A model generated the notes under the pieces. It was not told the origin of the DNA. It worked only from the letters and a program-made list of their open reading frames with translations, and did not search any database. A program made the translations under genes and the position numbers. 64,000 nucleotides of DNA from positions 558,001-622,000 of the forward strand of contig NIVC01000227.1 of NCBI GenBank assembly GCA_002269645.1, read 5' to 3'. Of this stretch, positions 6,778 through 62,903 are shown one piece after another; position 1 is the stretch's first letter; each line of letters begins with the position of its first letter. This DNA comes from Macrostomum lignano (taxonomy: Eukaryota).

Positions 6778-6823
6778 CTTGAATTCAAATGCATGCCTGC
6801 ACTATAAAAATCATACCTTCAAG

Positions 6824-13160: not shown

Positions 13161-13810
13161 GACGGTAGTTTCTATGAAAAACCGCTCGATTGTGGTAGTT
13201 TCTAGGAAAAACAAGTTAAATCCTGGTAGTTTTTAGCACAACTAGTTCCCTTCTGGTAGTTTCTAGGAAAACTAGTTTAACTCTAGTTTCTAGGAAAGCT
13301 AATTCATTTCTGGTAGTTTTTAGGAAAACCAGTTTAATTCTGGTAGTTTCTAAGAAAACCAGCTCAATTCTGGTAGTTTCTATGAAAACCAGCTCAATTC
13401 TGGTAGTTTCTAAGAAAACCAGCTCAATTCTGGTAGTTTCTAAGAAAACCAGCTCAATTCTGGTAGTTTCTAAGAAAACCAGCTCAATTCTGGGAGTTTC
13501 TATGAAAACCAGCTCGATTCTGGTAGTTTCTAGGAAAAACAAGTTAAATGCTGGTAGTTTTTAGCAAAACTAGTTCGCTTCTGGTAGTTTCTAGGAAAAA
13601 CAAGTTAAATCTTGGTAGTTTTTAGCAAAACTAGTTCGCTTCTGGTAGTTTCTAGGAAAACCAGTTCACTCTTGGTAGTTTCTAGGAAAACCAGTTTAAT
13701 TTTGGTAGTTTCTAGGAAAACCAGTTTAACTCTGGTAGTTTCTAGGAAACCCAGTTCAATCCTGGGAGTTTCTAGGAAAACCAGTTCGTTTCTGGTAGTT
13801 TCTAAGAAGT
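13161..13810. repeat. 30-bp minisatellite (TCTGGTAGTTTCTAGGAAAACCAGTTTAAT), each unit an imperfect palindrome
   Basis: About 21 units. CTGGTAGTTTCT pairs imperfectly with AGGAAAACCAG. Explains the FLETTRIELV ORFs. Confidence 0.9.
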
Positions 13811-14625: not shown

Positions 14626-15171
14626 TCAGCATTCGCCGTCGGCATAGTCCTGCAGATAGGCATAGGCGGAGGTCAGCTTGCCGTTCTCGGCGATGGTGGC
14701 ATCTTGAAGCACGCGGCTGCAGCCGCCGGGGGCCACGTGCGGCAGCAGCATCTCGGGCACTACCCGGCGCAGGAGGAGCTCGCCGAAGGTGCTGGACGAA
14801 TCGCGCGGCAGTTCGATCGGCAGATTGTCAACCGACATCACGTCGACGTAGGCTTTGTCGATATTTCGATTGTCGGAGGGCACCTCGCAACCGCTGCTGG
14901 GGTCGAAGGTGAAGATGGGGTCGTCCACGGTGGTGGCTCGTAAAGTGGACGGCAGCGAGGCCACCGGGGCGATGTCGCAGGTGATGTCGCCGACAAGTTG
15001 GATGCCGAAGTCGGGCCGGCGCATGTCCTCAAGCATGAGCAGCGGGGCGCAGCGGTGGTCCCAAAAGATGCCGTTGATCAGCACGTTGGCCCTGGTGGCG
15101 AACGGCCAAATGACGCTGTGGTAGCCGGTTGGGTCGGAGAAAAACTCCACGCTCCAGCCGGCCTCGGGGCC
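14626..15171 (-). CDS. Stand-alone LKR/saccharopine dehydrogenase (Lys-forming)-like enzyme, copy A, exon 3
   Basis: GPEAGWSVEFFSDPTGY...LINGIFWD...GDITCDI...VDNLPIELPRDSSSTFG...ENGKLTSAYAYLQDYADGEC*. Acceptor CCGCCAAG|GGC is phase 0 and gives LFRK-GPEAG, collinear with copy B LFRL-GPDNS. Confidence 0.85.
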   Translation of the reverse strand, partial: GPEAGWSVEFFSDPTGYHSVIWPFATRANVLINGIFWDHRCAPLLMLEDMRRPDFGIQLVGDITCDIAPVASLPSTLRATTVDDPIFTFDPSSGCEVPSDNRNIDKAYVDVMSVDNLPIELPRDSSSTFGELLLRRVVPEMLLPHVAPGGCSRVLQDATIAENGKLTSAYAYLQDYADGEC

Positions 15172-15429
15172 CTTGGCGGATGGGTGCAGGGCAGATTCGA
15201 TGTACTGAAATTCGTGCATTTTTACGATTGTTTCCAATTTTCCTCCGCTGTAGCCTGGAGCTGGGGTTGACAGTGATTCAGAGAAATAATATCCAGGACG
15301 ATTTGAGTAGTCACGCAATCAGCCAATTGTGCGCTGGCTAAATGTCCGGATTTACAAGAATATGTTGATTTAATGCGAGGCTTTTGTAGACAGACAGAAT
15401 TATGGATAGATAGAAGATAGAGATAGAGA

Positions 15430-15560
15430 GATATACTTACAGACAGACAGACATAGAAACAGACAGGCAGAGGCAGACAGACATACATTAAGACAGACAG
15501 ACAGACACAGGCATAGAGTAAGACAGAAAGACAGACAGACAGGCACACATACACGAAGGC

Positions 15561-15627
<67 letters not shown>

Positions 15628-15640
15628 AAGACAGACAGGC
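15430..15640. repeat. (GACA)n microsatellite in intron 2 of copy A
   Basis: Long AGAC/GACA run. Confidence 0.9.
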
Positions 15641-15755
15641 AGGGTAGAAATCCCTAAACTGAATCAGTAAGCTAATAAAGGTGAATTAGCAGCAGGCATG
15701 GAATCAGCGCTAGAGACTGGCGGAATCCGCAGCCGCTACCTGTGAGCAAACAGAC

Positions 15756-15925
15756 CTTGCGGAACAGCCAGTCCGCAGGCAGCTGGGTATACGTGCCCGC
15801 GTGCCCCGGCTGCCACTCGCGGGCCAGAAAGTCCTGCGGCGCCAGGCGCTCCAGGCCCAGCAGGTCAAGCAGTTCGCAGGCTCCGTTGCCAACCCGACCG
15901 TCGCCAGTGACAACCACGCGAAGAT
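15756..15925 (-). CDS. LKR/SDH-like copy A, exon 2 (Rossmann glycine motif)
   Basis: Acceptor CGCCAG|AT (phase 1). Reads DLRVVVTGDGRVGNGACELL...DWLFRK. Donor AAG|GTCTGT (phase 0). 170 nt = 2 + 56 codons. Confidence 0.85.
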
Positions 15926-16868
15926 CTGGCGTTACGAGCGAAATTAAATGACTTTTCTATGTACAAGCAGGAGCCATAGCAACTGCTTTAGTTCGTATTT
16001 TTTGTAAACGCGAAAATTTATTATTTTCTTTATTCTGTCTTGTTGAAGTACACGAGGATCCGTCAAGCTGGACTCAAGTAGTTGATGCTTGCTCTCAAGT
16101 GCTCAAAAAGTGACAGAATGAATACTGTCCCGGGAAAGTCCTTTTAGAACTGCTTTCCGAGCTTCGCGCGTTATTCTTATTTTCGATTTTCACTGTGCCA
16201 AGAAGATACCTACGGACAAGTGATTTTTAGTATAGTGGACTAGCAACCTGCGCCCCGCGTTGGGGAGGCAAAAAAGCAGTAGTTTTTTTTACTTAACTAC
16301 ATATATCTGTCGACCTTATACAATCTTGTACAATTTTGTCACTATTGTTTGTTTCTTTAGGAAAACTATGTTCAAAGCCTCCCTTTGAGCCATGGCTTAA
16401 CTTTTAACCTACCTTTGATGCTTCGCCTATCAACAACTTCCAACTGACCCTTGGCATCCCAGCATTGCTGCCAATCTCATGAGTTCTCCCTGCGAGCCTT
16501 GGCGTCTCAACAATTTTTTATGTATTAGGGGCATTTTCAAGTTTTTCCCTAGCTAAATAATCTGTTCAACATAATTGCCCGCGGCAAGTCAGATATTGGA
16601 AGCATTGCTGGTCTTTTGTAAGAATTCAATATTTAACCAAGCGGCTGTTCGTATGCAGAAACATCCCATTACTGACGCTTAAACGTGGAATGTCTTCAAG
16701 ATAAGGAGCAAATAAATCGACATAAAATAAAGGTTCGGCCGGACAAAAACTACTTGGAAACGCAATACCTCGTACCTGGGTGCCAAATAAGAAACCGTTT
16801 GAATTAATATAATCGAAAATCGTCTCATGTGACAACTTTTGGGTTTTCAAGGAACCAAAGACACAAAC

Positions 16869-17454
16869 CTCTCATCATCTCCGGCTTGATCTCATCAGCG
16901 TAGCGCTTTTTGGCCGCCTCCCAGTCCTGCGCCTCCCTCAGCCGGAACAGCTGGCAGCAGCCAGAGCGCCGGCCCCAGGCCATCATGGTGTTGTGCGCGC
17001 CCACAATGCCCGCCCAGCGACCGAATCCCACCAGTCGGATGCCTAGGGCGTCGCGCATGCACTCCCAGTCCATGAGGCGGATGCCTTTGTCCAGGACAGC
17101 TCTCAGCAGATCCCTATTGTGAGGCTGCTTCTTAATAGTGTGCGAGAACAGGGCGTAGGTGGCCCCAGGCTGCAGGGTGTCCACAGCAGGCGGCTTCACT
17201 CCGAGCAGAAAGTCGGCGCCAACCGCTTTCTCAACAATTTTCGCCCCAGCGGCCAAATATTCTTTGTCGCTGTAGCAGCGAAATGGGCAGCTTTCAACAA
17301 GGATAGTGACTCTGGAGCCGTACAGGGAGAGGATCTCCTCGCAGTTGGCCGGAGTCAGCGGAACCCGGGTCTCATCAGGAATCAGAGTCTCGCGGATGAT
17401 GCCAATGGTGACTGGAGCACCAGAATTGTTAGCTTCAGTGTTTGTGCTGGACAT
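16869..17454 (-). CDS. LKR/SDH-like copy A, exon 1 (AlaDh/PNT N-terminal domain)
   Basis: IGIIRET..DETRVPLTP, CYSDKEY, LLGVK, FSHTIKKQPHNR, IRLMDWE, GFGRWAGIVGAHN. Donor AGA G|GTTTGT at 16869/16868 (phase 1). Spliced CDS 586+170+546 = 1302 nt, 433 aa, with no disruption. Confidence 0.9.
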
Positions 17455-20400: not shown

Positions 20401-21023
20401 ATAGTTCAACGAGCTTATCAGGTCTCTGATTTAACGGCGCCAGCGCGCAATGAGATATTCTGACTGTAAAGAAGCAAAAGGCCAAGTACTGTAGGTGAAT
20501 CAGCAGATAGAAAAATGGCCACGTTTTGGTAAATATAATAATACGAAAAAGCTGACTACCATAATTACGCAATATGCAGATCGCAAAAAAATATCGTAAA
20601 AATAAAGTGCTTGGGCGGCGGGGTTACAACAAAAAGCGCAAGCGCTGGGAAAAAGACGCTAAGGTTAAATTTTTATGTTACGATTAGAACAACAAAGCTT
20701 TAGCACGGAGTAGCAAAAAACTTAAAAAATTAAAAAAATATGTTTTATTCATCAATATAACAATTCGATTACTATAGAAAATAATAACATAGTACGAAAC
20801 ATCCAATACCGATTTTTTATTACGTCCGTAACCCGGAAAACGCGCGATCCGCATAGCAACAGGAGTTTCTAAGAAACAGGACGAAAAAAATTGAATTTTA
20901 TTAGTTGTTTAGTAAAACTTCTGTTTTATTTTTTTACTCCCATTGCTATGTGGAAATGATAAGGCAAGAGAAATATAATTAATTGTGATAGAAACATGAG
21001 AAAAACACCGTCACCTTTACTAA

Positions 21024-21029
21024 TTTATT
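21024..21029 (-). promoter_or_regulatory. Candidate polyadenylation signal of copy B
   Basis: AATAAA on the minus strand about 50 nt downstream of the stop at 21081, in AT-rich sequence, so it could be chance. Confidence 0.35.
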
Positions 21030-21080
21030 ACTAAAAGTAATTAAAAGTTATTAAAAGTCTTGGTCAGTTCCAGTTGTCAA

Positions 21081-21377
21081 TCAGTCCTCGGCCGCGTTGA
21101 CAAAGTCGCTCAGGTAGGCGAACACGCTTGTCAGCTTGCCGGCTTCCGTGATGGTGGCGCCCTCCAGCACCGGGCTGACCCGCTGATTGCCATCAGCAGC
21201 AGCCGCCTGGAGGAACTCCGGCAGCACCTTGTTGAGAATCATGTCGCCAAAGTCGCGGGAGGCATCCCGAGGCAGCTCGCTAGGCAGGTTGTCCACCGCC
21301 ATGACGTCAACGGCAAGGGCTGAACGCGGCTCGCCTGGCTGCAGCTCGCGACCGAGCTCCGGGTCGAAGGTCAGCAC
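21081..21377 (-). CDS. LKR/SDH-like copy B, exon 4
   Basis: Acceptor CCCAAG|GTG (phase 0). VLTFDP...VMAVDNLPSELPRDASRDFG...EAGKLTSVFAYLSDFVNAAED*. Joins KDP|VLTFDP, collinear with copy A DDPIFTFDP. Confidence 0.85.
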   Translation of the reverse strand: MLTFDPELGRELQPGEPRSALAVDVMAVDNLPSELPRDASRDFGDMILNKVLPEFLQAAAADGNQRVSPVLEGATITEAGKLTSVFAYLSDFVNAAED

Positions 21378-21904
21378 CTTGGGTTTGGGAGAAGTCGGGC
21401 AGCCATTCTTACTCAGGATTCCACATTCAATTTGAGATCCTCAAGCTACGGTATGGATGGGTGCAAAGCGCTGGAAACTGCGCTCATATTCTTAATACCT
21501 CCATCTGGAACGGCTTGAATTAGATCGGGCAGGCAGGTTGACCTCGCTAGCAAGAAAGATGGCGAGCCGAACTCCAAGCACCTGGGCAGTGCAGGCTCGC
21601 AACACGCAGGGCGAGCGTGGACAATAACAAGCAAGGAAAGCACTGCTTGAGTTCACTCAATGTCGCCCCATTTCTAAACTCTAAACAGCCCGCCTTTCTG
21701 CTCAGGACTGCGCAGTTACTCGACAATAAAGGCTATTCACTTGCTCACAGCAGTTTGAGAGGGCGAGTCTTTTGTTTGAGAATTGGGTAGCTCAGACCAT
21801 CTACTGCGGGTTAAATTTCTTGCTGCTACTATGGACAGAAGATGCCGAGGATTCGAAAATATCAAATTTTACAATGGATTTTCTTCGCTACGGTTAAAAT
21901 TGGG

Positions 21905-24900
21905 TAGGGTGATCCTTAACTATGGTATGGTGATCCTTAACCATGGTATGGTGATCCTTAACCATGGTATGGTGATCCTTAACCATGGTATGGTGATCCT
22001 TAACCATGGTATGGTGATCCTTAACCATGGTATGGTGATCCTTAACCATAATATGATGATTCTTAACCATGGTATGGTGATCCTTAACCATGGTATGGTG
22101 ATCCTTAACCATAATATGATGATCCTTAACCATGGTATGGTGATCCTTAACCATAATATGATGATTCTTAACCATGGTATGATGATCCTTAACCATAATA
22201 TGATGATTCTTAACCATGGTATGATGATCCTTAACCATAATATGATGATTCTTAACCATGGTATGATGATCCTTAACCATAATATGATGATTCTTAACCA
22301 TGGTGTGATGATCCTTAACCATAATATGATGATTCTTAACCATGGTATGATGATCCTTAACCATAATATGATGATCCTTAACCATGGTATGATGATCCTT
22401 AACCATAATATGATGATCCGTAACCATGGTATGATGATCCTTAACCATAATATGATGATCCTTAACCATGGTATGATGATCCTTAACCATGGTATGGTGA
22501 TCCTTAACCATGGTATGGTGATCCTTAACCATGGTATGGTGATCCTTAACCATGGTATGATGATCCTTAACCATGGTATGGTGATCCTTAACCATGGTAT
22601 GGTGATCCTTAACCATGGTATGATGATCCTTAACCATGGTATGATGATCCTTAACCATGGTATGATGATCCTTAACCATGGTATGATGATCCTTAACCAT
22701 GGTATGATGATCCTTAACTATGGTATGATGATCCTTAACCATGGTATGGTGATTCTTAACCATGGTATGATGATCCTTAACTATGGTATGGTGATCTTTA
22801 ACCATGGTATGGTGATCCTTAACCATGGTATGGTGATCCTTAACCATGGTATGATGATCTTTAACTATGGTATGGTGATCCTTAACCATGGTTTGGTGAT
22901 CCTTAACTATGGTATGGTGATCCTTAACCATGGTATGATGATCTTTAACCATGGTATGGTGATCCTTAACTATGGTATGATGATCTTTAACCATGGTATG
23001 ATGATCTTTAACCATGGTATGATGATCTTTAACTATGGTATGGTGATCCTTAACCATGGTTTGGTGATCCTTAACTATGGTATGGTGATCCTTAACCATG
23101 GTATGATGATCTTTAACTATGGTATGGTGATCCTTAACCATGGTATGATGATCTTTAACCATGGTATGATGATCTTTAACCATGGTATGGTGATCCTTAA
23201 CCATGGTATGGTGATCCTTAACCATGGTATGGTGATCCTTAACCATGGTATGATGATCTTTAACCATGGTATGGTGATCCTTAACCATGGTATGGTGATT
23301 CTTAACCATGGTATGATGATCCTTAACCATGGTTTGGTGATCCTTAACTATGGTATGGTGATCCTTAACCATGGTATGATGATCTTTAACCATGGTATGG
23401 TGATCCTTAACCATGGTATGATGATCTTTAACCATGGTATGATGATCTTTAACCATGGTATGGTGATCCTTAACCATGGTATGGTGATTCTTAACCATGG
23501 TATGATGATCCTTAACCATGGTTTGGTGATCCTTAACTATGGTATGGTGATCCTTAACCATGGTATGATGATCTTTAACTATGGTATGGTGATCCTTAAC
23601 CATGGTATGATGATCTTTAACCATGGTATGATGATCTTTAACCATGGTATGGTGATCCTTAACCATGGTATGGTGATCCTTAACCATGGTATGATGATCT
23701 TTAACTATGGTATGGTGATCCTTAACCATGGTATGATGATCTTTAACTATGGTATGGTGATCCTTAACCATGGTATGGTGATCCTTAACCATGGTATAAT
23801 GATCTTTAACCATGGTATGATGATCTTTAACTATGGTATGGTGATCCTTAACCATGGTATGGTGATCCTTTACTATGGTATGGTGATCCTTAACCATGGT
23901 ATGATGATCTTTAACCATGGTATGGTGATCCTTAACCATGGTATGGTGATCCTTAACCATGGTATGGTGATCCTTAACCATGGTATGATGATCTTTAACC
24001 ATGGTATGATGATCTTTAACCATGGTATGGTGATCCTTAACTATGGTATGGTGATCCTTAACCATGGTATGATGATCCTTAACCATGGTATGATGATCCT
24101 TAACCATGGTATGATGATTCTTAACCATGGTATGATGATTCTTAACCATGGTATGGTGATCCTTAACCATGGTATGGTGATCCTTAACCATGGTATGATG
24201 ATACTTAACTATGGTATGATGATCCTTAACCATGGTATGATGATCCTTAACTATGGTATGATGATCCTTAACCATGGTATGATGATCCTTAACTATGGTA
24301 TGATGATCTTTAACTATGGTATGGTGATCCTTAACCATGGTATGGTGATCCTTAACTATGGTATGGTGATCCTTAACTATGGTATGGTGATCCTTAACCA
24401 TGGTATGATGATCTTTAACTATGGTATGATGATCTTTAACCATGGTATGATGATCTTTAACCATGGTATGGTGATTCTTAACCATGGTATGATGATCTTT
24501 AACCATGGTATGATGATCCTTAACCATGGTATGATGATCCTTAACCATGGTATGATGATCCTTAACCATGGTATGATGATCCTTAACCATGGTATGATGA
24601 TCCTTAACTATGGTATGATGATCCTTAACCATGGTATGGTGATTCTTAACCATGGTATGATGATCCTTAACTATGGTATGGTGATCTTTAACCATGGTAT
24701 GGTGATCCTTAACCATGGTATGGTGATCCTTAACCATGGTATGATGATCTTTAACTATGGTATGGTGATCCTTAACCATGGTTTGGTGATCCTTAACTAT
24801 GGTATGGTGATCCTTAACCATGGTATGATGATCTTTAACCATGGTATGGTGATCCTTAACTATGGTATGATGATCTTTAACCATGGTATGATGATCTTTA

Positions 24901-27900: not shown

Positions 27901-28312
27901 TTAACCATGGTATGGTGATCCTTAACCATGGTATGGTGATCCTTAACCATGGTATGATGATCTTTAACCATGGTATGGTGATCCTTAACCATGGTATGGT
28001 GATTCTTAACCATGGTATGATGATCTTTAACTATGGTATGGTGATCCTTAACCATGGTATGGTGATCCTTAACTATGGTATGGTGATCCTTAACCATGGT
28101 ATGATGATCTTTAACCATGGTATGGTGATCCTTAACCATGGTATGGTGATCCTTAACCATGGTATGGTGATCCTTAACCATGGTATGATGATCTTTAACC
28201 ATGGTATGATGATCTTTAACCATGGTATGGTGATCCTTAACTATGGTATGGTGATCCTTAACCATGGTATGATGATCCTTAACCATGGTATGATGATCCT
28301 TAACCATGGTAT
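21905..28312. repeat. 21-bp satellite array 1 (CATGGTATGGTGATCCTTAAC), ~305 units
   Basis: Continuous 21-bp period with a small set of variant positions. Lies in intron 3 of copy B. Confidence 0.97.
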
Positions 28313-29831
28313 TGAGGCGGAAGGCCTTTTTGTTTCAATAGATGGAATGGCAGCGAAGAGTTTGTGCTGCTTTGCGCGTGTATTTATATGAGATTTACAA
28401 ACAACGCCAGATTGAGGGCCAAGGGAGGTGCGAAAAGGTGGCATGGCGTGATTGGCTACGCCAACCCCCCCGGCTTAGCGAGCCGGCTAGTTTGGCGCGT
28501 ACCCACCCCACCTCAGCTAGACAGAGGCGGGGGGGTTTCCAGTGCGGCTGCACTGGTGCTGCCGGTCGCGTAGTCTGGCCGCCACACAGCTCCCCCCAGC
28601 ACCGAGCTAGGCCCCGAACGTCGGGTGGTAGCCGAGGCAGCGAGAGCGCCGAGGAGCGGGCGCCGAAGGCGGCGGGGGCGCGAGGCGGGCGCCGAAGGCA
28701 GCAGAGCGCCGATGGCAGCAGGTCGCCGAGCGGGCGCCGATGGCAGCAGGTCGCCGAGCGGGCGCCGATGGCAGCAGGTCGCCGAGCGGGCGCCGATGGC
28801 AGCAGGTCGCCGAGCGGGCGCCGATGGCAGCAGGTCGCCGAGCGGTCGCCGGGCGGGCGCCGAAAGCAGCAGGGCGCCAGGCGGGCGCCGAAGGCAGCAG
28901 GGCGCCAGGCGGGCGCCGAAGGCAGCAGGGCGCCAGGCGGGCGCCGAAGGCAGCAGCAGGGCGCCAGGCGGGCGCCGAAGGCGGCAGGGGCGCGAGGCGG
29001 GCGCCGAAGGCAGCAGGGCGCCAGGCGGGCGCCGAAGGCAGCAGGGCGCCAGGCGGGCGCCGAAGGCAGCAGAACGCCAGGCGGGCGCCGAAGACAGCAG
29101 GGCGCCAGGCGGGCGCCGATAGCAGCAGGGCGCCAGGCGGGCGCCGATGGCAGCAGGGCGCCAGGTGGGCGCCGAAGGCAGCAGGGGCGCGCGGCCGTAC
29201 CACACCAGAGGCAATCGACAGTCAGTTGCCGCCGTGAGCCGGATCGATGCTCCTGCACAGAGGCTGGGGACGTTAGGCTAGCAGCAGCGGTGCTAACCTA
29301 GAAGTAGCTGCAGCGTGTGGCGCTGGTTGGTCCAACGCGGGGGCCGAAAGGCGAGACCCCAGGAGCTACCGGGGGCGGGCTGACTGGGCCGATTCGTGCT
29401 GCTGGGCTGCGGTGCTGCTGGGCTGCGGTGCTGCTGTGCTGCGGTGCTGCGGTGCTGCGGTGCTGCTGTTGCAGTCGGCCAAGGCGGTTGGCTGCCAGGA
29501 CCGCACAGGGCCGACCAGGTAGGCCCAGCGTTCCGCGCTGGGTGTCGGGCTCACCAATGAGGCGGAAGGCCTTTTTGTTTCAATAGATGGAATGGCAGCG
29601 AAGAGTTTGTGCTGCTTTGCGCGTGTATTTATATGAGATTTACAAACAACGCCAGATTGAGGGGCCAAGGGAGGTGCGAAAAGGTGGCATGGCGTGATTG
29701 GCTACGCCAACCCCCCCGGCTTAGCGAGCCGGCTAGTTTGGCGCGTACCCACCCCACCTCAGCTAGACAGAGGCGGGGGGTTTCCAGTGCGGCTGCACTG
29801 GTGCTGCCGGTCGCGTAGTCTGGCCGCCACA
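28313..29831 (-). mobile_element. Non-autonomous LTR retroelement (TRIM-like), copy 1
   Basis: 274-bp direct repeats at 28313-28586 and 29558-29831 with TG...CA ends and inverted termini (TGAGGCGG / CCGCCACA). 4-bp TSD GTAT at 28309-28312 and 29832-29835. On the minus strand: PBS TGGTGAGCCCGAC (29556-29544, 12/13 match to the canonical tRNA-Trp PBS TGGTGACCCCGAC), PPT GGGGGGAG before the 3' LTR, CCAAT and TATAAATA boxes in the LTR. The internal ~970 bp is GC-rich ~27-bp repeats with no gag/pol motif. Confidence 0.88.
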
Positions 29832-31599
29832 GTATGATGATTCTTAACCATGGTATGATGATTCTTAACCATGGTATGGTGATCCTTAACCATGGTATGG
29901 TGATCCTTAACCATGGTATGATGATCCTTAACTATGGTATGATGATCCTTAACCATGGTATGATGATCCTTAACTATGGTATGATGATCCTTAACCATGG
30001 TATGATGATCCTTAACCATGGTATGATGATCCTTAACTATGGTATGATGATCTTTAACTATGGTATGGTGATCCTTAACCATGGTATGATGATCTTTAAC
30101 CATGGTATGATGATCTTTAACCATGGTATGGTGATCCTTAACTATGGTATGGTGATCCTTAACCATGGTATGATGATCCTTAACCATGGTATGATGATCC
30201 TTAACCATGGTATGATGATTCTTAACCATGGTATGATGATTCTTAACCATGGTATGGTGATCCTTAACCATGGTATGGTGATCCTTAACCATGGTATGAT
30301 GATACTTAACTATGGTATGATGATCCTTAACCATGGTATGATGATCCTTAACTATGGTATGATGATCCTTAACCATGGTATGATGATCCTTAACTATGGT
30401 ATGATGATCTTTAACTATGGTATGGTGATCCTTAACCATGGTATGGTGATCCTTAACTATGGTATGGTGATCCTTAACTATGGTATGGTGATCCTTAACC
30501 ATGGTATGATGATCTTTAACTATGGTATGATGATCTTTAACCATGGTATGATGATCTTTAACCATGGTATGGTGATTCTTAACCATGGTATGATGATCTT
30601 TAACCATGGTATGATGATCCTTAACCATGGTATGATGATCCTTAACCATGGTATGATGATCCTTAACCATGGTATGATGATCCTTAACCATGGTATGATG
30701 ATCCTTAACTATGGTATGATGATCCTTAACCATGGTATGGTGATTCTTAACCATGGTATGATGATCCTTAACTATGGTATGGTGATCTTTAACCATGGTA
30801 TGGTGATCCTTAACCATGGTATGGTGATCCTTAACCATGGTATGATGATCTTTAACTATGGTATGGTGATCCTTAACCATGGTTTGGTGATCCTTAACTA
30901 TGGTATGGTGATCCTTAACCATGGTATGATGATCTTTAACCATGGTATGGTGATCCTTAACTATGGTATGATGATCTTTAACCATGGTATGATGATCTTT
31001 AACCATGGTATGATGATCTTTAACTATGGTATGGTGATCCTTAACCATGGTTTGGTGATCCTTAACTATGGTATGGTGATCCTTAACCATGGTATGATGA
31101 TCTTTAACTATGGTATGGTGATCCTTAACCATGGTATGATGATCTTTAACCATGGTATGATGATCTTTAACCATGGTATGGTGATCCTTAACCATGGTAT
31201 GGTGATCCTTAACCATGGTATGGTGATCCTTAACCATGGTATGATGATCTTTAACCATGGTATGGTGATCCTTAACCATGGTATGGTGATTCTTAACCAT
31301 GGTATGATGATCTTTAACTATGGTATGGTGATCCTTAACCATGGTATGGTGATCCTTAACTATGGTATGGTGATCCTTAACCATGGTATGATGATCTTTA
31401 ACCATGGTATGGTGATCCTTAACCATGGTATGGTGATCCTTAACCATGGTATGGTGATCCTTAACCATGGTATGATGATCTTTAACCATGGTATGATGAT
31501 CTTTAACCATGGTATGGTGATCCTTAACTATGGTATGGTGATCCTTAACCATGGTATGATGATCCTTAACCATGGTATGATGATCCTTAACCATGGTAT
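29832..31599. repeat. 21-bp satellite array 2
   Basis: Same unit, about 84 copies, between the two LTR elements. Confidence 0.97.
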
Positions 31600-33117
31600 T
31601 GAGGCGGAAGGCCTTTTTGTTTCAATAGATGGAATGGCAGCGAAGAGTTTGTGCTGCTTTGCGCGTGTATTTATATGAGATTTACAAACAACGCCAGATT
31701 GAGGGGCCAAGGGAGGTGCGAAAAGGTGGCATGGCGTGATTGGCTACGCCAACCCCCCCGGCTTAGCGAGCCGGCTAGTTTGGCGCGTACCCACCCCACC
31801 TCAGCTAGACAGAGGCGGGGGGTTTCCAGTGCGGCTGCACTGGTGCTGCCGGTCGCGTAGTCTGGCCGCCACACAGCTCCCCCAGCACCGAGCTAGGCCC
31901 CGAACGTCGGGTGGTAGCCGAGGCAGCGAGAGCGCCGAGGAGCGGGCGCCGAAGGCGGCGGGGGCGCGAGGCGGGCGCCGAAGGCAGCAGAGCGCCGATG
32001 GCAGCAGGTCGCCGAGCGGGCGCCGATGGCAGCAGGTCGCCGAGCGGGCGCCGATGGCAGCAGGTCGCCGAGCGGGCGCCGATGGCAGCAGGTCGCCGAG
32101 CGGGCGCCGATGGCAGCAGGTCGCCGAGCGGTCGCCGGGCGGGCGCCGAAAGCAGCAGGGCGCCAGGCGGGCGCCGAAGGCAGCAGGGCGCCAGGCGGGC
32201 GCCGAAGGCAGCAGGGCGCCAGGCGGGCGCCGAAGGCAGCAGCAGGGCGCCAGGCGGGCGCCGAAGGCGGCAGGGGCGCGAGGCGGGCGCCGAAGGCAGC
32301 AGGGCGCCAGGCGGGCGCCGAAGGCAGCAGGGCGCCAGGCGGGCGCCGAAGGCAGCAGAACGCCAGGCGGGCGCCGAAGACAGCAGGGCGCCAGGCGGGC
32401 GCCGATAGCAGCAGGGCGCCAGGCGGGCGCCGATGGCAGCAGGGCGCCAGGTGGGCGCCGAAGGCAGCAGGGGCGCGCGGCCGTACCACACCAGAGGCAA
32501 TCGACAGTCAGTTGCCGCCGTGAGCCGGATCGATGCTCCTGCACAGAGGCTGGGGACGTTAGGCTAGCAGCAGCGGTGCTAACCTAGAAGTAGCTGCAGC
32601 GTGTGGCGCTGGTTGGTCCAACGCGGGGGCCGAAAGGCGAGACCCCAGGAGCTACCGGGGGCGGGCTGACTGGGCCGATTCGTGCTGCTGGGCTGCGGTG
32701 CTGCTGGGCTGCGGTGCTGCTGTGCTGCGGTGCTGCGGTGCTGCGGTGCTGCTGTTGCAGTCGGCCAAGGCGGTTGGCTGCCAGGACCGCACAGGGCCGA
32801 CCAGGTAGGCCCAGCGTTCCGCGCTGGGTGTCGGGCTCACCAATGAGGCGGAAGGCCTTTTTGTTTCAATAGATGGAATGGCAGCGAAGAGTTTGTGCTG
32901 CTTTGCGCGTGTATTTATATGAGATTTACAAACAACGCCAGATTGAGGGGCCAAGGGAGGTGCGAAAAGGTGGCATGGCGTGATTGGCTACGCCAACCCC
33001 CCGGCTTAGCGAGCCGGCTAGTTTGGCGCGTACCCACCCCACCTCAGCTAGACAGAGGCGGGGGGGTTTCCAGTGCGGCTGCACTGGTGCTGCCGGTCGC
33101 GTAGTCTGGCCGCCACA
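31600..33117 (-). mobile_element. Non-autonomous LTR retroelement (TRIM-like), copy 2
   Basis: LTRs 31600-31873 and 32844-33117, TSD GTAT at 31596-31599 and 33118-33121. Near-identical to copy 1 apart from homopolymer length differences. Confidence 0.88.
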
Positions 33118-33640
33118 GTATGATGATTCTTAACCATGGTATGATGATTCTTAACCATGGTATGGTGATCCTTAACCATGGTATGGTGATCCTTAACCAT
33201 GGTATGATGATCCTTAACTATGGTATGATGATCCTTAACCATGGTATGATGATCCTTAACTATGGTATGATGATCCTTAACCATGGTATGATGATCCTTA
33301 ACCATGGTATGATGATCCTTAACTATGGTATGATGATCTTTAACTATGGTATGGTGATCCTTAACCATGGTATGATGATCTTTAACCATGGTATGATGAT
33401 CTTTAACCATGGTATGATGATCCTTAACCATGGTATGATGATCCTTAACCATGGTATGGTGATCTTTAACCATGGTATGATGATCCTTAACTATGGTATG
33501 ATGATCCTTAACTATGGTATGGTGATCCTTAACCATGGTATGATGATCCTTAACCATGGTATGATGATCCTTAACTATGGTATGGTGATCCTTAACCATG
33601 GTATGGTGATCCTTAACTATGGTATGGTGATCCTAACTAC
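33118..33640. repeat. 21-bp satellite array 3, degenerating at its right edge
   Basis: Same unit; decays after about 33640. Confidence 0.95.
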
Positions 33641-33748
33641 GGTTGAACGTAGATTGTGAACTACGGTATGGGGATTCTTAATTACGGTATGGGGGTTGTT
33701 AACTTCGGTAGATTTTTAACTATGGTATGGTCTTAACTACCGTATGGT

Positions 33749-33930
33749 AGGGAATTTAGCTACGGTATGGAAGGGAATTTAGCTACGGTATGGAAGGGAA
33801 TTTAGCTACGGTATGGAAGGGAATTTAGCTACGGTATGGAAGGGAATTTAGCTACGGTATGGAAGGGAATTTAGCTACGGTATGGAAGGGAATTTAGCTA
33901 CGGTATGGGAGGGAATTTAGCTACGGTATA
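33749..33930. repeat. 23-bp tandem repeat (AGGGAATTTAGCTACGGTATGGA), eight copies
   Basis: Eight units at 23-bp spacing. Confidence 0.9.
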
Positions 33931-34082
33931 GTGTTCTAAACTAAGGAAAGGGAATTCTAAAACCTCAGAATTGGGATTCTTGAACTTTTAGGTGCGAGGA
34001 TTTGGGACATCCAGACTCATAACTAATGGGCCAAGAGTCCTATAAAATCTCAAACTCGGAGTAACAATCCCACAATCCTCAC

Positions 34083-34509
34083 CGGATCCTTCACAACGGT
34101 GGGCCGCACAGTGCAGGGCAGCGAGGCCACCGGGGCGATGTCGCAGGTGATGTCGCCAATCAGTCGGACGGCCATCTCCGGCCGGCACATCTGCTCGATG
34201 GTGAGCAACGGGCCGCAGCGGTTGTCCCAGTACATGCCGTTGATCAGAATGTTGGCCTTGACCATGTAGGGCCAGGCGATGCTGTGGTAGCCGGTGGGTT
34301 GGCATAGTAGTCGGGACTCCAGCTGTTGTCCGGGCCAAGGCGGAACAGGTGGTCGGCGGGCAGCTGGGCGTACACGGGCGGATGATCGGCCGATGACCAG
34401 TCGCGGGCCAGCAGATCGGCTGGCGAGATCTTTTCGAAGCCGAGCAAATCCAGAATCTCTCTGCAGCCGGTGCCGACCCGACCGCTGCCGGTGAGGACAA
34501 CTCGCATGC
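34083..34509 (-). CDS. LKR/SDH-like copy B, exon 3, with 1-bp deletion at 34296-34298
   Basis: Acceptor TTCCGCAG|GC (phase 1, branch-like CTAAT upstream). GMRVVLTGSGRVGTGCREIL...DYYAN(P)TGYHSIAWPYMVKANILINGMYWD...GDITCDI...VKDP. Donor CCG|GTGAGG. One extra C in AAC CC(C) ACC restores the frame. Confidence 0.85.
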
Positions 34510-34739
34510 CTGCGGAATGGCGAGGTCGAGTATTAGCGATCATATAAAATACACTGGCAGTCTTAGCTCTTCCCCCAGTTGTTGATAAGCGCTAGATAAG
34601 CAAATCATTGTTTGTTTAGTAAAATCACTAAATGAAGATTGCAAATAGAAAACAATAAGAAAATTTTTTATCTAGCACAGATATCCAACTTTCAAGCATG
34701 AGATATCTGCTTTCCCACTTTGAATTGCCCCCCGCATTC

Positions 34740-36320
34740 TCAGCAACTCCCTCTATGACCCTTGGCGTCTCAGCAGTCCCTTTATGACCATTGAATCTTA
34801 GCAATTCCCTCTATGACCGTTAGCATCTCAGCAACTCCCTCTATGACCCTTGGCATCACAGCAATTCCCTCTATGACCCTTGGCATCTCAGCAATTCCTC
34901 TATGACCCTTGGCATCTCAGCAATTCCCCTATGACCCTTGGCGTCTAAGCAATTCCCTTTATGACCCTTGGCATCTCAGCAATTCCCCTATGACCCTTGG
35001 CGTCTAAGCAATTCCCTTTATGACCCTTGGCATCTCAGCAGTCCCTTTATGACCATTGAGATCTCAGCAATTCCCTCTATGACCCTTGGCATCTCAGCAG
35101 TCCCTTTATGACCATTGAGATCTCAGAAATTCCCTCTATGACCCTTGGCATCTCAGCAGTCCCTTTATGACCCTTGGCATCTCAGCAATTCTCTTTATGA
35201 CCCTTGGCATCTCAGCAGTCCCTTTATGACCATTGAGATCTCAGCAATTCCCTCTATGACCCTTGGCATCTCAGCAGTCCCTTTATGACCATTGAGATCT
35301 CAGCAATTCCCTCTATGACCCTTGGCATCTCAGCAGTCCCTCTATGACCCTTGGCATCTCAGCAGTCCCTTTATGACCCTTGGCATCTCAGCAATTCTCT
35401 TTATGACCCTTGGCATCTCAGCAGTCCCTTTATGACCATTGAGATCTCAGCAATTCCCTCTATGACCCTTGGCATCTCAGCAGTCCCTTTATGACCATTG
35501 AGATCTCAGCAATTCCCTCTATGACCCTTGGCATCTCAGCAGTCCCTCTATGACCCTTGGCATCTCAGCAGTCCCTTTATGACCCTTGGCATCTCAGCAA
35601 TTCTCTTTATGACCCTTGGCATCTCAGCAATTCTCTTTAAGACCATTGAGATCTCAGCAATTCCCTCTATGACCCTTGGCATCTCAGCAGTCCCTTTATG
35701 ACCATTGAGATCTCAGCAATTCCCTCTATGACCCTTGGCATCTCAGAAATTCCCTCTATGACCCTTGGCATCTCAGCAGTCCCTTTATGACCCTTGGCAT
35801 CTCAGCAATTCTCTTTATGACCCTTGGCATCTCAGCAGTCCCTTTATGACCATTGAGATCTCAGCAATTCCCTCTATGACCCTTGGCATCTCAGCAGTCC
35901 CTTTATGACCATTGAGATCTCAGCAATTCCCTCTATGACCCTTGGCATCTCAGCAGTCCCTCTATGACCCTTGGCATCTCAGCAGTCCCTTTATGACCAT
36001 TGAGATCTCAGCAATTCCCTCTATGACCCTTGGCATCTCAGCAGTCCCTTTATGACCCTTGGCATCTCAGCAATTCTCTTTATGACCATTGGCATTTCAG
36101 CAGTTACTTCTATGACCCATAATATCTAAAGAATTTCATCTATGACCCTTAAAATCTCAGCAATTCCCTTTATGAAACTTGGCATCTCATTGAATCCTCT
36201 TTATGACCCTTGGCATCTAAGGAACTCCCTATGACCCTTGGAATCTAAGGAATTCCATTTTATTACCTTTGATATCTAAGAAATCCCCTAATGACCCTTG
36301 GCATCTCAGGAATTCCTCAT
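34740..36320. repeat. 29/30-bp minisatellite (CTCAGCAATTCCCTCTATGACCCTTGGCAT) in intron 2 of copy B
   Basis: More than 50 units mixing 29- and 30-bp variants. Confidence 0.93.
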
Positions 36321-36583
36321 AGAGCATAACCTTTGGTGCGTTAAAGCCTAATTTTAGCGCTTAACACTACTCCTCAGTCTAACGTTTGTACACCTTTGTG
36401 TGTGTACCTGCGGACATATCCGTGTGCGTGCCCAGGCGTCAGGTGTCCAGGCTGGCTGCAGGTCGGCTGGCGACTGCCTTGATTTGCATCAAAGCCCCCT
36501 GACTAAGGTGGGGAAGAGACGAGAGAGCGAAAACAGTAATAATTAGACAGCTCTACTCAAATCAGAGGAGCCGCTATACTCAC

Positions 36584-36941
36584 CGCGCAGCAGTTCAATG
36601 GGCAGCTCCTCGCGGTAGCGCCTCTGCGCCGCCTCCCAGTCGGCGATTTTGCACAGGCGGAACAGATCAAAGCGGCCAGTCTTTTTACCCCAAGCCGCTA
36701 TGGTGTTGTGCGCCCCGACTATGCCGGCCCAGCGGCCGAAACCAATTAGGCGAACTTTGTTCTCGTCACGCATAAATTCCCAATCCATTAGGCGAATACC
36801 TTTGGCTAGGATTGCTCTAAGCAGCGTGCGATTTTGCGGCTGCCGCTTGGCTGTGTGCGAGAACATCACGTAGGTTGAGTTGTCCTTCAGCGACTCAATG
36901 GAAGCCGCCTTGACGCCCAGTAGCAAATCTACATTTTCAGC
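36584..36941 (-). CDS. LKR/SDH-like copy B, exon 2
   Basis: Acceptor TCGCAG|GCT (phase 0). AENVDLLLGVK...FSHTAKRQPQNR...GFGRWAGIVGAHN...ELLR. Donor CGC G|GTGAGT (phase 1), the same position and phase as intron 1 of copy A. Confidence 0.9.
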
Positions 36942-37315
36942 CTGCGATTTTTTAATATTTCAATTTTGTAACATTTTTGTTTGAAAGAATAAAATCATAG
37001 AAAAAATGCCTTTAGTTCTACTAACAGTACCTTCAACAAGTAGGTAATAAAAATTGTAGTTCAAACTTTTTTGATGCAAATTGAACATATTCTGCAACAA
37101 AAAAACTTCTGAACTGAACCGAAAAATATAAAATCTGTACAGATTCAAAGCTGAAAAATTAACTGCATACAATTATCCAGTATATAATCACTGCATTAAG
37201 TCCTAATATAATAGCAAGTTCCATCCGTAGCCTGAAATTACTATACAACTATATACTATACAACATTTTAGCAAATAAAGAAAAATATGGTCTCTATATA
37301 CAAGTATATACTTAC

Positions 37316-37525
37316 CTTCTCAACTAGCTTTATTCCAAGATCTTCATATTCCTTGTCACTATAGCAGCGAAATGGATATTTCTCAACCACAATGGCCACT
37401 TTGTCACCATATTGAGCTAGTATCTTGGCACATTGGTTAGGAGTCAATGGAGTCCTAGTTTCATTTGGCACCATAGTCTCACGCAGGACTCCAATGGTGA
37501 ATGGCTTAGGCTTGTTGTTAGTCAT
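37316..37525 (-). CDS. LKR/SDH-like copy B, exon 1
   Basis: MTNNKPKPFTIGVLRETMVPNETRTPLTP...CYSDKEY...LVEK. Donor AAG|GTAAGT (phase 0). 70 codons. Confidence 0.9.
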
Positions 37526-52571: not shown

Positions 52572-52725
52572 AGATTATAAAATAATAAAAAATGTTCTTA
52601 AGTGCTAGGGAACATTTAATCAAGACGCTGATAATATTTTATGCCATTCTTTGTTGTGGCTTTTTAACTTAGTATTAACCAGTCCAAAAAGACATTTGCA
52701 AAGCAGTAGCAATTTGACTCTTTTA

Positions 52726-62651: not shown

Positions 62652-62903
62652 AGGAACGGAGCTTTTGTATTTCTAGCTCCGGCGTGCAAAGGTTAAAATG
62701 CTAATTCACCTCAATTTTATAGTTACCAACTGCAAAAAGTTGTAAAGTTTGAGCAAGACCGCAATCGCATTAAACTAAAACTTGCTGGATTACATAGCGT
62801 GTATGTGTCTAAATACCGATTGAGAAAGGTTTAAATACACTAGAAAGTACAAAAAATCACAGACGATCAAAATTCACGAAAAATTGATAGATATTAGACT
62901 CAC

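What the first reader, a model, noticed from the sequence alone, without database searches (positions are those of the whole stretch)
14626..37525. Tandem pair of intron-bearing, bacterial-type stand-alone LKR/saccharopine dehydrogenase genes in an animal-type genome (HGT candidate)
Seen: two spliced ~430-aa genes that stop right after YAYLQDYADG / FAYLSDFVN, so there is no fused C-terminal SDH domain. Established: animal AASS is a bifunctional ~900-aa mitochondrial protein. From memory, its LKR domain reads SHTIKAQEANM, GVAGMIN, TGTGNVSKGA, DISAD and DNLPAQLP. Both copies here instead read SHTIKKQPHNR/SHTAKRQPQNR, GIVGAHN, TGxGRVGxG, DITCDI and DNLPxELPRDxS..FG, which is the pattern I recall for the ~400-aa single-domain Bacteroidota SDH-like proteins (SHTIKKQPYNR, GIVGAYN, TGNGRVGNGA, DITCDI, DNLPCELPRDAS). 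Inference: a bacterial gene was acquired, intronised and duplicated. GT-AG introns and eukaryotic transposons in and around the genes argue against contamination.
Basis: partly seen in the sequence, partly recalled or inferred. Interest (0 to 1): 0.85.

Follow-up and report, generated by a model that had tools for sequence, protein, structure and literature searches.

The report
Bacterial lysine-reductase-like gene pair in flatworm
The flatworm Macrostomum lignano carries two neighbouring, intron-containing genes for a stand-alone lysine-ketoglutarate-reductase-like enzyme whose nearest relatives are bacterial (Bacteroidota), so this looks like an apparently unreported but otherwise ordinary case of a bacterial gene taken up, given introns and duplicated in an animal.

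Summary
Observation confirmed, interpretation supported. The window is Macrostomum lignano Mlig_3_7 contig NIVC01000227.1 (100% identical over 23.3 kb).

- **The genes.** Two minus-strand genes with GT-AG introns encode single-domain LKR/saccharopine-dehydrogenase-like proteins: A (14626-17454, 433 aa, intact) and B (21081-37525, 430 aa). No SDH domain lies anywhere in the window.
- **Correction.** Gene B here lacks one C in a C4 run (34296-34298), so GenBank annotates it as a truncated 280-aa protein. It is intact at a second locus of the same assembly.
- **Nearest relatives.** The closest non-self relatives in 5.8 billion protein clusters are bacterial ~400-aa proteins, mainly Saprospiraceae, Lewinellaceae and Chitinophagales (42-48% identity, 354-389 bits). 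Eukaryotic bifunctional AASS-type proteins score at most 175 bits.
- **Tree.** In a 142-sequence NJ tree, A+B (bootstrap 100) nest in the bacterial clade. Their sister lies among Bacteroidota/cyanobacterial sequences in 185 of 200 replicates. The backbone is weak and no ML tree was run.
- **History.** A shared phase-1 intron shows that intron gain preceded the tandem duplication. dN/dS is about 0.32.
- **Function.** The catalytic Lys/His/Arg residues are conserved. The AlphaFold model (pLDDT 93) best matches the human AASS LKR domain.
- **Status.** The genes are already annotated as hypothetical proteins; I found no report of HGT. Biochemical function and the presence of a canonical AASS are untested.

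The parts
16869..17454 (-). Gene A exon 1 (ATG at 17454; codons 1-195 plus 1 nt)
   Evidence: The ORF and the splice donor GAG|GTTTGT. The resulting protein matches UniRef A0A1I8I4M3 at 99%.
15926..16868 (-). Gene A intron 1. GT-AG, 943 nt, phase 1. It sits at the same codon as gene B intron 2.
   Evidence: An alternative upstream acceptor is used in GenBank model PAA87531.1.
15756..15925 (-). Gene A exon 2, carrying the Rossmann motif VVVTGDGRVGNG
15172..15755 (-). Gene A intron 2. GT-AG, 584 nt, phase 0. It contains an (ACAG)n microsatellite and is absent from gene B.
14626..15171 (-). Gene A exon 3, including the stop codon
   Evidence: tblastn gives 100% identity.
37316..37525 (-). Gene B exon 1 (ATG at 37525)
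36584..36941 (-). Gene B exon 2
34083..34509 (-). Gene B exon 3. It carries a 1-nt deletion in a C-homopolymer at 34296-34298, which shifts the frame in this copy.
   Evidence: The same truncated reading appears in PAA87532.1.
21378..34082 (-). Gene B intron 3. GT-AG, 12,705 nt, phase 0. It is filled with 21-bp satellite arrays and GC-rich 28-bp minisatellite blocks.
   Evidence: The corresponding intron is about 1.75 kb at the sister locus L002.
21081..21377 (-). Gene B exon 4, including the stop codon
34510..36583 (-). Gene B intron 2. GT-AG, 2,074 nt, phase 1. It is homologous in position to gene A intron 1 and contains a 59-bp satellite.
36942..37315 (-). Gene B intron 1. GT-AG, 374 nt, phase 0, 26.5% GC. 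It is absent from gene A.

Best explanation
A single gene for a ~400-aa stand-alone LKR/saccharopine-dehydrogenase-like oxidoreductase (AlaDh_PNT superfamily) was transferred from a bacterium into an ancestor of Macrostomum lignano. The donor was most likely a marine or aquatic Bacteroidota of the Saprospirales/Chitinophagales kind.

Proposed history in the animal genome:
1. The gene acquired a spliceosomal intron, phase 1, just before the Rossmann GxGxxG motif.
2. It was duplicated in tandem into paralogs A and B, now 57% identical.
3. Each copy gained further introns.
4. The whole pair was later multiplied by the recent genome duplication or redundancy of M. lignano. The pair is now on three contigs.

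Both paralogs are transcribed and spliced, and they have evolved under purifying selection.

By inference they encode NAD(P)-dependent enzymes that catalyse the LKR/Lys1-type reaction: L-lysine + 2-oxoglutarate + NAD(P)H <-> saccharopine + NAD(P)+. They are probably cytosolic, having no presequence. Unlike animal AASS, they are not fused to an SDH domain.

The origin by transfer is shown by sequence evidence. The reaction, the cofactor and the physiological role are inferred, not shown.

The copy of gene B in this window carries a one-base frameshift. This is either a PacBio homopolymer error or a decaying redundant copy.
For: **Identity of the locus**
- The window is 100% identical over 23,291 nt to NIVC01000227.1.
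- A second locus, NIVC01002490.1, carries the same B->A tandem at 94-98% identity.
- A third contig also carries the pair.

**Gene models**
- They have GT-AG introns.
- They reproduce the transcript-derived GenBank and UniProt proteins: 433 aa with 3-4 differences, and 430 aa with 1 difference.
- The Mlig_3_7 annotation was built from RNA-seq (PMC5730564).

**Bacterial affinity**
- The top 118 non-self hits are at 42-48% identity. Every named one is bacterial, and none comes from the EukProt or MMETSP sources.
- Genome contexts are bacterial.
- The GTDB scan is dominated by Saprospiraceae, Lewinellaceae and Chitinophagales.
- Representative search: bacteria reach 354 bits, against at most 175 bits for bifunctional eukaryotic AASS-type proteins. 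This gives an alien-index-type difference of at least about 125 natural-log units.
- NJ tree: A+B has bootstrap 100, and is sister to P0003 at 71-85%.
- In 185 of 200 replicates the sister lies within the Bacteroidota/cyanobacterial group. It includes AASS-type sequences in 7 of 200.
- Profile scores are 428 and 431 bits (bacterial type) against 328 and 333 bits (AASS type).

**One acquisition, then duplication**
- The two copies share a phase-1 intron at aligned codons 196 (A) and 190 (B).

**Constraint and function**
- dN/dS between A and B is about 0.32.
- All 46 family-invariant columns are kept. So are 99 (A) and 96 (B) of the 120 columns that are at least 90% conserved.
- The residues aligned with yeast Lys1 R18, K77, H96, K99, E122, R131 and D319 are conserved: R30, K87, H105, K108, E131, R140 and D367 in A. 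The residue roles are from my own knowledge of the Lys1 literature.
- The AlphaFold model has pLDDT 92.9. Its best PDB matches are the human AASS LKR/LOR domain (TM 0.80), then yeast Lys1.
Against: **Phylogeny**
- The phylogeny is NJ only. Backbone nodes have near-zero bootstrap.
- With only the 118 closest hits plus two outgroups, the flatworm pair came out as sister to all bacteria rather than nested.
- The nearest bacterial sequence is only 48-50% identical, so no close donor has been sampled.

**Distribution**
- Other Macrostomum or flatworm genomes and transcriptomes do not appear to be in the databases used. P0001 and P0002 have no Logan source. The age and taxonomic spread of the gene in animals are therefore unknown.
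- One eukaryote-labelled sequence of this type exists (Rhizamoeba saxonica transcriptome). It is in another subclade, and all its relatives are bacterial.

**Function**
- The function of the bacterial family itself is not established here. There is no conserved operon partner in 80 loci.
- Both flatworm copies have replaced several residues that are nearly invariant in bacteria: K24L/M, E88P/A, K98A/S, P294A/G and G340T. Specificity may have shifted.

**This locus**
- Gene B in this window is frameshifted.
Confidence: 0.8

Rival explanations
1. The gene is an ancient eukaryotic or metazoan paralogue of the LKR domain. It was inherited vertically and lost in almost all other lineages. Its similarity to the bacterial proteins would reflect slow evolution or an old eukaryote-to-bacteria transfer.
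For: With the closest hits only, the flatworm pair is sister to all 118 bacterial sequences. Deep nodes of the broader tree are unsupported. One amoebozoan transcriptome sequence belongs to the same family.
Against: - No other eukaryote sequence appears among the top hits of a database that does contain UniRef, NCBI nr, EukProt and MMETSP.
- With broad sampling the pair nests about ten nodes deep in bacterial diversity. It is sister to a Bacteroidota-type sequence in 83-92% of replicates.
- The amoeba sequence sits in a different subclade, and all its nearest relatives are Cytophagales/Flavobacteriales.
- The family is found in more than 590 bacterial species genomes.
Confidence: 0.07
2. The sequences are bacterial contamination or an assembly chimera, not part of the flatworm genome.
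For: Their best hits are bacterial. Exon GC (59-62%) is well above the window average of 43%.
Against: - Five GT-AG spliceosomal introns interrupt the reading frames exactly where homology breaks.
- One intron holds 12.7 kb of satellite DNA.
- The pair is present on three contigs of 103-702 kb.
- The nearest bacterial protein is only about 48% identical.
- The gene models come from poly(A)/RNA-seq-based annotation.
- A eukaryotic KDZ transposase lies on the same contig.
Confidence: 0.01
3. The gene reached the flatworm indirectly, from another eukaryote (prey alga, amoeba or symbiont) that had itself acquired it from bacteria.
For: M. lignano feeds on diatoms (my own knowledge). A bacterial-type homologue occurs in an amoebozoan transcriptome.
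Against: No MMETSP or EukProt sequence is among the 120 best hits to gene A. The amoeba sequence is only 40% identical and is not sister to the flatworm pair.
Confidence: 0.04
4. The genes are transferred relics without function, and the frameshift in gene B of this window is real decay rather than an assembly error.
For: One C is missing in exon 3 of gene B at this locus. The annotated models at this locus are truncated: 280 aa for B, and 225 aa for A through an alternative acceptor. The assembly holds redundant copies on which selection may be relaxed.
Against: - Gene A here is intact, and gene B is intact at two other loci.
- A and B have diverged to 57% identity without any stop codon. dN/dS is about 0.32 and all invariant catalytic columns are kept.
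- The lesion lies in a C4 homopolymer of a PacBio-era assembly, which is a typical error site.
Confidence: 0.08

Closest known systems
Bacterial ~400-aa single-domain AlaDh_PNT_N proteins of Bacteroidota and Cyanobacteria. They are annotated 'NAD(P)-dependent oxidoreductase', 'alanine dehydrogenase' or 'saccharopine dehydrogenase (NAD+, L-lysine-forming)'.
   Same: - The architecture is collinear over the full length, at 42-48% identity.
- All 46 invariant columns are shared.
- The motifs match: SHTIKKQP.NR, GIVGAHN, TGxGRV, DITCDIAP and DNLPxELPRDAS.
- The family profile scores the flatworm proteins at 428-431 bits.
   Different: - The flatworm genes have introns, eukaryotic flanks and 9-15 extra N-terminal residues, plus a few short loop insertions.
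- They replace several residues that are nearly invariant in bacteria.
- The biochemical function of the bacterial family is itself only an annotation. No conserved gene neighbour was found.
LKR (LOR) domain of human AASS (PDB 8DDA, 8E8T/U/V)
   Same: It is the best solved-structure match by sequence (E 6e-37 over the full length) and by fold (TM 0.80). The SHT.K, R..GFG and DNLP..LP active-site motifs are shared.
   Different: - Identity is only 25-30%.
- AASS is bifunctional, with a fused C-terminal SDH domain, and is mitochondrial. The flatworm proteins end after the LKR-like domain, and no SDH exon lies in the window.
- The 7-aa and 17-aa AASS insertions are absent.
- The AASS-type profile scores about 100 bits lower than the bacterial-type profile.
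Saccharomyces cerevisiae Lys1, saccharopine dehydrogenase (NAD+, L-lysine-forming), PDB 2Q99/2QRJ/3UH1
   Same: It is also a stand-alone single-domain enzyme of the same fold (TM 0.64-0.67 normalised to the model, 0.74-0.78 normalised to Lys1). The positions aligned with R18, K77, H96, K99, E122, R131 and D319 are conserved.
   Different: Similarity is weak (E about 1e-12 to 1e-14, 22-23% identity). Lys1 works in fungal lysine biosynthesis. E78 of Lys1 is Pro in gene A and Ala in gene B.
Documented bacteria- or fungus-to-invertebrate transfers of metabolic genes that later gained introns and were duplicated. Examples are bdelloid rotifers and the springtail beta-lactam genes (PMC5200902 appeared).
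   Same: The pattern is the same: donor-like sequence, host-like gene structure, expression, and duplication after transfer.
   Different: The recipient here is a free-living flatworm, and the gene is a paralogue-by-transfer of an enzyme domain that animals normally already have within AASS. I found no earlier report of it.

Membership tests
Bacterial-type stand-alone LKR/SDH-like family (AlaDh_PNT_N, ~400 aa) | Single-domain architecture with only an AlaDh_PNT_N Pfam match, collinear with family members over the full length | tested here: met
   Pfam gives E 6e-20 and 1e-18. Query coverage by the bacterial hits is 95-98%.
Bacterial-type stand-alone LKR/SDH-like family (AlaDh_PNT_N, ~400 aa) | Closer to this family than to any other, by best hits, profile score and tree | tested here: met
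   Bacterial hits score 354-389 bits against at most 175 bits for eukaryotic AASS-type proteins. Profile scores are 428-431 against 328-333 bits. The pair nests in the clade in 193 of 200 NJ bootstraps. The trees are NJ only.
Bacterial-type stand-alone LKR/SDH-like family (AlaDh_PNT_N, ~400 aa) | Conservation of the family's invariant residues | tested here: met
   46 invariant columns include both flatworm proteins. 99 (A) and 96 (B) of the 120 columns at least 90% conserved are kept.
Bacterial-type stand-alone LKR/SDH-like family (AlaDh_PNT_N, ~400 aa) | Enzymatic activity (lysine/2-oxoglutarate reductase or saccharopine dehydrogenase) | not testable with these tools
   This needs recombinant protein and an assay. 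The bacterial names are automated annotations.
Animal AASS (bifunctional LKR/SDH) | LKR domain fused to a C-terminal saccharopine dehydrogenase (Sacchrp_dh) domain | tested here: not met
   A stop codon follows directly after the LKR-like domain in both genes. tblastn finds no SDH-domain similarity in the 64 kb.
Animal AASS (bifunctional LKR/SDH) | Groups with metazoan/eukaryotic LKR domains | tested here: not met
   A separate 49-sequence clade holds human AASS, Pigoraptor and the other bifunctional representatives. The flatworm pair joined it in 7 of 200 replicates.
Animal AASS (bifunctional LKR/SDH) | N-terminal mitochondrial presequence | tested here: inconclusive
   There are only 9-15 residues before the first beta-strand. 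In A they are acidic and polar (MSSTNTEANNSGAP). No targeting predictor was available.
Lys1-type saccharopine dehydrogenase (catalytic mechanism) | Acid-base pair Lys77/His96 and the carboxylate-binding Arg18/Arg131 (numbering and roles from my own knowledge of the yeast enzyme) | tested here: met
   The aligned residues in A are K87, H105, R30 and R140. They are invariant across the family.
Horizontally acquired gene resident in a metazoan genome | Physical integration: spliceosomal introns, host repeats, long host contigs | tested here: met
   There are five GT-AG introns, satellite arrays inside introns, a 702-kb contig, and three loci.
Horizontally acquired gene resident in a metazoan genome | Absence from other metazoans | tested here: inconclusive
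   No metazoan hit other than M. lignano appears among the best 120 of 5.8 billion clusters. Other Macrostomum and flatworm data appear not to be in the collection.
Horizontally acquired gene resident in a metazoan genome | Transcription and correct splicing | tested here: inconclusive
   The evidence is indirect. The GenBank models derived from RNA-seq equal my homology-based models. No reads were examined here.

The most novel reading that the evidence does not exclude
The bacterial-type enzyme has taken over, or added to, the first step of lysine catabolism in Macrostomum. It would act as a cytosolic, unfused LKR. Possible effects are replacement of a lost AASS LKR domain, or a new route that feeds saccharopine or pipecolate production for osmotic or dietary adaptation in an intertidal, diatom-eating worm. 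The two diverged paralogues and the shared replacement of residues nearly invariant in bacteria (E88, K24, K98) may reflect new substrate specificities.
Probability: 0.15. Interest if true: 0.7.

Novelty: new member of a known kind. Interest (0 to 1): 0.5.

Why it matters
Clear bacteria-to-animal transfers that are intronised, duplicated, expressed and under selection are still few. In the papers searched here I found none reported for free-living flatworms.

M. lignano is a transgenic, RNAi-amenable regeneration model. The role of an acquired lysine-pathway enzyme could therefore be tested directly in the animal.

The shared intron against the copy-specific introns gives a small, datable record of intron gain after transfer.

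The case also flags a very large bacterial enzyme family that is uncharacterised as far as I could find. All 8,000 candidates scored were below 1e-20, and the 'saccharopine dehydrogenase' label rests on annotation only.

Tried and rejected
1. **Tree with the 118 closest hits plus human AASS and yeast Lys1.** The flatworm pair came out sister to all bacteria. I judged this uninformative, because the ingroup was narrow and the outgroup branches long. I replaced it with 50%-identity representatives.
2. **Bacterial gene neighbourhoods as a clue to function.** Six contigs (five proteins) were inspected individually, and 80 GTDB loci were clustered. No conserved partner emerged. The most frequent neighbour is a convergent purC-like (SAICAR-synthase-like) gene in 11 of 80 loci.
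3. **Indel signatures as independent evidence.** The two large AASS insertions are absent. However, the flatworm proteins have their own short insertions in loops where AASS-type proteins also vary: 10-13 of 34 columns are occupied. I did not use this as strong evidence.
4. **Independent confirmation of the gene B frameshift.** The 'second' occurrence (PAA87532.1) is this very contig, so it is not independent.
5. **Literature.** I searched for a prior report of this transfer, for the Mlig gene identifiers, and for the Lys1/AASS active-site papers. Nothing was retrievable. Neshich et al. 2013 (PMC3834855) is not held.
6. **The 119-aa ORFs at 53.07 and 58.39 kb.** They look mariner-like by eye, and the ORF at 50.56 kb looks like a reverse-transcriptase zinc-finger tail. 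Pfam gave no significant match for any of them.
7. **Exact look-up of P0001.** It is not on record.
8. **The remaining protein search.** I ran no further search on a canonical AASS in M. lignano. Only the best 120 hits are listed, and a flatworm AASS would be unlikely to rank among them.

Full report
**What is in the sequence.**
- On the minus strand of 14626-37525 lie two genes in tandem, B upstream of A.
- Gene A has three exons: 17454-16869, 15925-15756 and 15171-14626. Both introns are GT-AG. It translates to an uninterrupted 433-aa protein ending YAYLQDYADGEC.
- Gene B has four exons: 37525-37316, 36941-36584, 34509-34083 and 21377-21081. Its three introns are GT-AG.
- The last intron of B is 12.7 kb. 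It consists almost entirely of 21-bp satellite arrays interleaved with GC-rich 28-bp minisatellites.
- Exons are 59-62% GC (GC3 72-78%). Introns and the intergenic spacer are 27-46% GC.
- The two proteins are 57% identical.
- Pfam sees only the AlaDh_PNT_N domain.
- No saccharopine-dehydrogenase (glutamate-forming) domain is detectable anywhere in the 64 kb. The 'stand-alone' observation therefore holds.

**Source and existing annotation.**
- The window is 100% identical, without a gap, to Macrostomum lignano contig NIVC01000227.1 of assembly Mlig_3_7, GCA_002269645.1.
- The same B->A pair lies on NIVC01002490.1 at 94-98% identity, with a much shorter satellite intron, and on a third contig. 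This fits the known redundancy of that assembly (PMC5730564).
- The full-length proteins already exist in GenBank and UniProt as 'hypothetical protein' or 'AlaDh_PNT_N domain-containing protein'. They are PAA57440.1 and A0A1I8I4M3 (433 aa), and PAA57439.1 (430 aa). They equal my homology-guided models apart from 1-4 residues.
- That annotation was built from RNA-seq assemblies. The match is therefore indirect evidence of transcription and of the splice sites.

**A correction to the observation.**
- In this window, exon 3 of gene B reads AACCCACC. The sister locus reads AACCCCACC.
- The missing C shifts the frame. GenBank accordingly lists this copy as a 280-aa partial protein, PAA87532.1.
- The 'second sighting' is the same contig. 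I therefore cannot tell a homopolymer error from real decay of a redundant copy.
- At this locus GenBank's gene A model (PAA87531.1, 225 aa) uses an alternative upstream acceptor in intron 1. The canonical acceptor gives the intact protein.

**Relatives.**
- Against 5.8 billion protein clusters, the only hits above 50% identity are M. lignano's own copies.
- The next 118 hits are 399-433-aa proteins at 42-48% identity and 354-389 bits. Every named one is bacterial: Bacteroidota, Saprospiraceae, Lewinellaceae, Chitinophagales and several Cyanobacteria. None comes from the EukProt or MMETSP sources.
- All six contigs I inspected (five proteins) are compact bacterial gene arrays.
- A scan of one genome per GTDB species returned 591 confirmed loci. 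The best 80 are overwhelmingly Saprospiraceae, Lewinellaceae, Chitinophagales and Cytophagales, with Crocosphaera and Mastigocoleus among the few others.
- In the exhaustive HMMER search of 1.84 billion representatives, bacterial-type proteins score up to 354 bits. Bifunctional 880-1115-aa AASS-type representatives score 157-175 bits. These were identified as MMETSP, Pigoraptor and Choanoeca sequences.
- On that common E-value scale the difference is at least about 125 natural-log units. That is far beyond the value of 45 conventionally used as an alien-index threshold (threshold from my own knowledge).

**Phylogeny.**
- A first NJ tree used only the 118 closest hits plus human AASS-LKR and yeast Lys1. 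It put the flatworm pair as sister to all bacteria. I regard that as uninformative.
- I then used 138 diverse representatives and top hits plus the flatworm pair, human AASS-LKR and yeast Lys1 (142 sequences, 398 columns), under three distance corrections. A+B are monophyletic (bootstrap 100).
- They are sister to P0003 (71-85%). P0003 is a metagenomic protein on a 467-kb bacterial contig.
- They sit about ten nodes deep inside a 91-sequence clade of ~400-aa proteins. A separate 49-sequence clade contains human AASS and the bifunctional proteins.
- Over 200 bootstrap replicates, the sister group lay within the 17-sequence Bacteroidota/cyanobacterial set 185 times. It lay elsewhere in the bacterial-type clade 8 times. 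It included AASS-type sequences 7 times.
- Backbone nodes are essentially unsupported. No ML method was available, so the precise donor is not resolved.
- Profile HMMs give the same answer. The bacterial-type profile scores 428 and 431 bits, and the AASS-type profile 328 and 333 bits. Human AASS behaves in the opposite way.

**History after transfer.**
- Gene A intron 1 and gene B intron 2 interrupt the aligned codons 196 and 190 in phase 1, just before the VVxTGxGRVG Rossmann motif.
- The other three introns are private to one copy.
- The simplest reading is: one acquisition, gain of one intron, tandem duplication, then further intron gains or losses. The recent multiplication of the locus, whose copies are 92-99% identical, came last.
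- A against B gives dN 0.35, dS about 1.1 and omega about 0.32. Between the two loci, exons of gene A differ by 0.7% and its introns by 3.5%.

**What the proteins probably do.**
- Both align over their full length with the LKR domain of human AASS (E 6e-37 and 2e-33). They align more weakly with yeast Lys1.
- An AlphaFold model of A (pLDDT 92.9, pTM 0.91) has the human AASS LKR/LOR domain as its best PDB match (TM 0.80). Yeast Lys1 comes next, then alanine dehydrogenases and transhydrogenase dI.
- The residues aligned with Lys1 R18, K77, H96, K99, E122, R131 and D319 are R30, K87, H105, K108, E131, R140 and D367 in A. They are invariant across the 120-sequence alignment. The catalytic roles of those Lys1 residues are from my own knowledge, as I could not retrieve the papers.
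- I therefore infer an active NAD(P)-dependent enzyme of the lysine/2-oxoglutarate <-> saccharopine type. It has no evident mitochondrial presequence and no fused SDH partner.
- This is inference only. The bacterial family has no conserved gene neighbour and only automated names.
- Both flatworm copies share replacements of residues nearly invariant in bacteria: K24L/M, E88P/A, K98A/S, Y130W, P294A/G and G340T. These could mean altered specificity.

**Other eukaryotes.**
- One representative, P0159 (327 bits, 40% identity), comes from the EukProt transcriptome of the amoeba Rhizamoeba saxonica.
- It lies in a different subclade.
- Its own best hits are all bacterial (Algivirga, Limibacter, Sediminitomix, Tenacibaculum; at most 55% identity), with no further eukaryotic source.
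- It is either prey contamination or an independent transfer. It does not indicate a eukaryotic lineage of this enzyme.

**Novelty and verdict.**
- The genes are known as unnamed models.
- I found no paper that mentions them, or any horizontal transfer into Macrostomum. The genome paper contains no occurrence of the word 'horizontal'.
- This is a well-supported new example of a known phenomenon, not a new kind of system.
- Open points: an ML phylogeny, the distribution of the gene in other flatworms, whether M. lignano retains a canonical AASS, whether the frameshift is real, and the enzymology.

Noticed in passing
window 21903-28312, 29832-31599, 33118-33634 (21-bp unit GTATGATGATCCTTAACCATG); 28706-29186 and 31992-32472 (28-bp GC-rich unit): About 11 kb of satellite DNA sits inside the last intron of gene B. 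It is arranged as a higher-order repeat: the 28-bp GC-rich array at 28706-29186 recurs with the same periods, scores and consensus units at 31992-32472, and the same ORF translations recur at a 3,286-nt offset across about 28.6-29.8 kb and 31.9-33.1 kb. The same intron is only about 1.75 kb at the sister locus NIVC01002490.1. The array is therefore expanded here or collapsed there.
   Followed up: partly
window 52595-54957 and 56864-59228: A 2.37-kb inverted repeat, 99-100% complementary, with a 1.9-kb spacer. The arms carry identical 119-aa and 111-aa ORFs and inverted 40/41-bp satellites. It could be a real palindrome or a long-read assembly artefact. Pfam gave no match for the ORFs.
   Followed up: partly
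window 60314-60817 and 62900-63391 (minus strand): Two ORFs match the Kyakuja-Dileera-Zisupton (KDZ) transposase, at E 1e-26 and 3e-8. This is a fragmented or intron-containing eukaryotic DNA transposon.
   Followed up: partly
window 5022-6779, 9571-10086, 11937-12599, 13164-13808, 34738-36317, 51677-52566, 54853-55516: There are many further tandem arrays, with periods of 20, 149, 26-52, 30, 59, 48 and 40 bp. A large share of the window is satellite DNA, and long 'ORFs' run through the arrays on both strands.
   Followed up: no
window 15926-16868 (gene A intron 1): GenBank model PAA87531.1 for this locus uses an alternative acceptor about 30 nt upstream of the canonical one. This gives a frameshifted 225-aa product. 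It may be a minor isoform or an artefact of transcript assembly.
   Followed up: partly
protein P0159 (EukProt, Rhizamoeba saxonica transcriptome): A bacterial-type single-domain LKR-like ORF occurs in an amoebozoan transcriptome, with its first 83 residues duplicated in tandem. Its nearest relatives are Cytophagales, at 55% identity at most. It is either contamination or an independent transfer.
   Followed up: yes
protein P0218 (1052 aa, marine metagenomes; cluster members named M3 family metallopeptidase, Schleiferiaceae): This is a bacterial fusion of the LKR-like domain (residues 2-397) with a C-terminal M3 metallopeptidase / peptidyl-dipeptidase Dcp-like region. The 90%-identity cluster has 106 members, about half of those listed being full length (1052 aa). 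It hints at a link between this enzyme family and peptide or amino-acid catabolism.
   Followed up: no
loci L003/L004 and L001 (bacterial contigs carrying P0003/P0127): In the bacterial lineage closest to the flatworm genes, the LKR-like gene overlaps an upstream sulfotransferase gene by 4 nt and is followed by a universal stress protein gene. This arrangement was not seen in the other bacterial loci inspected.
   Followed up: no
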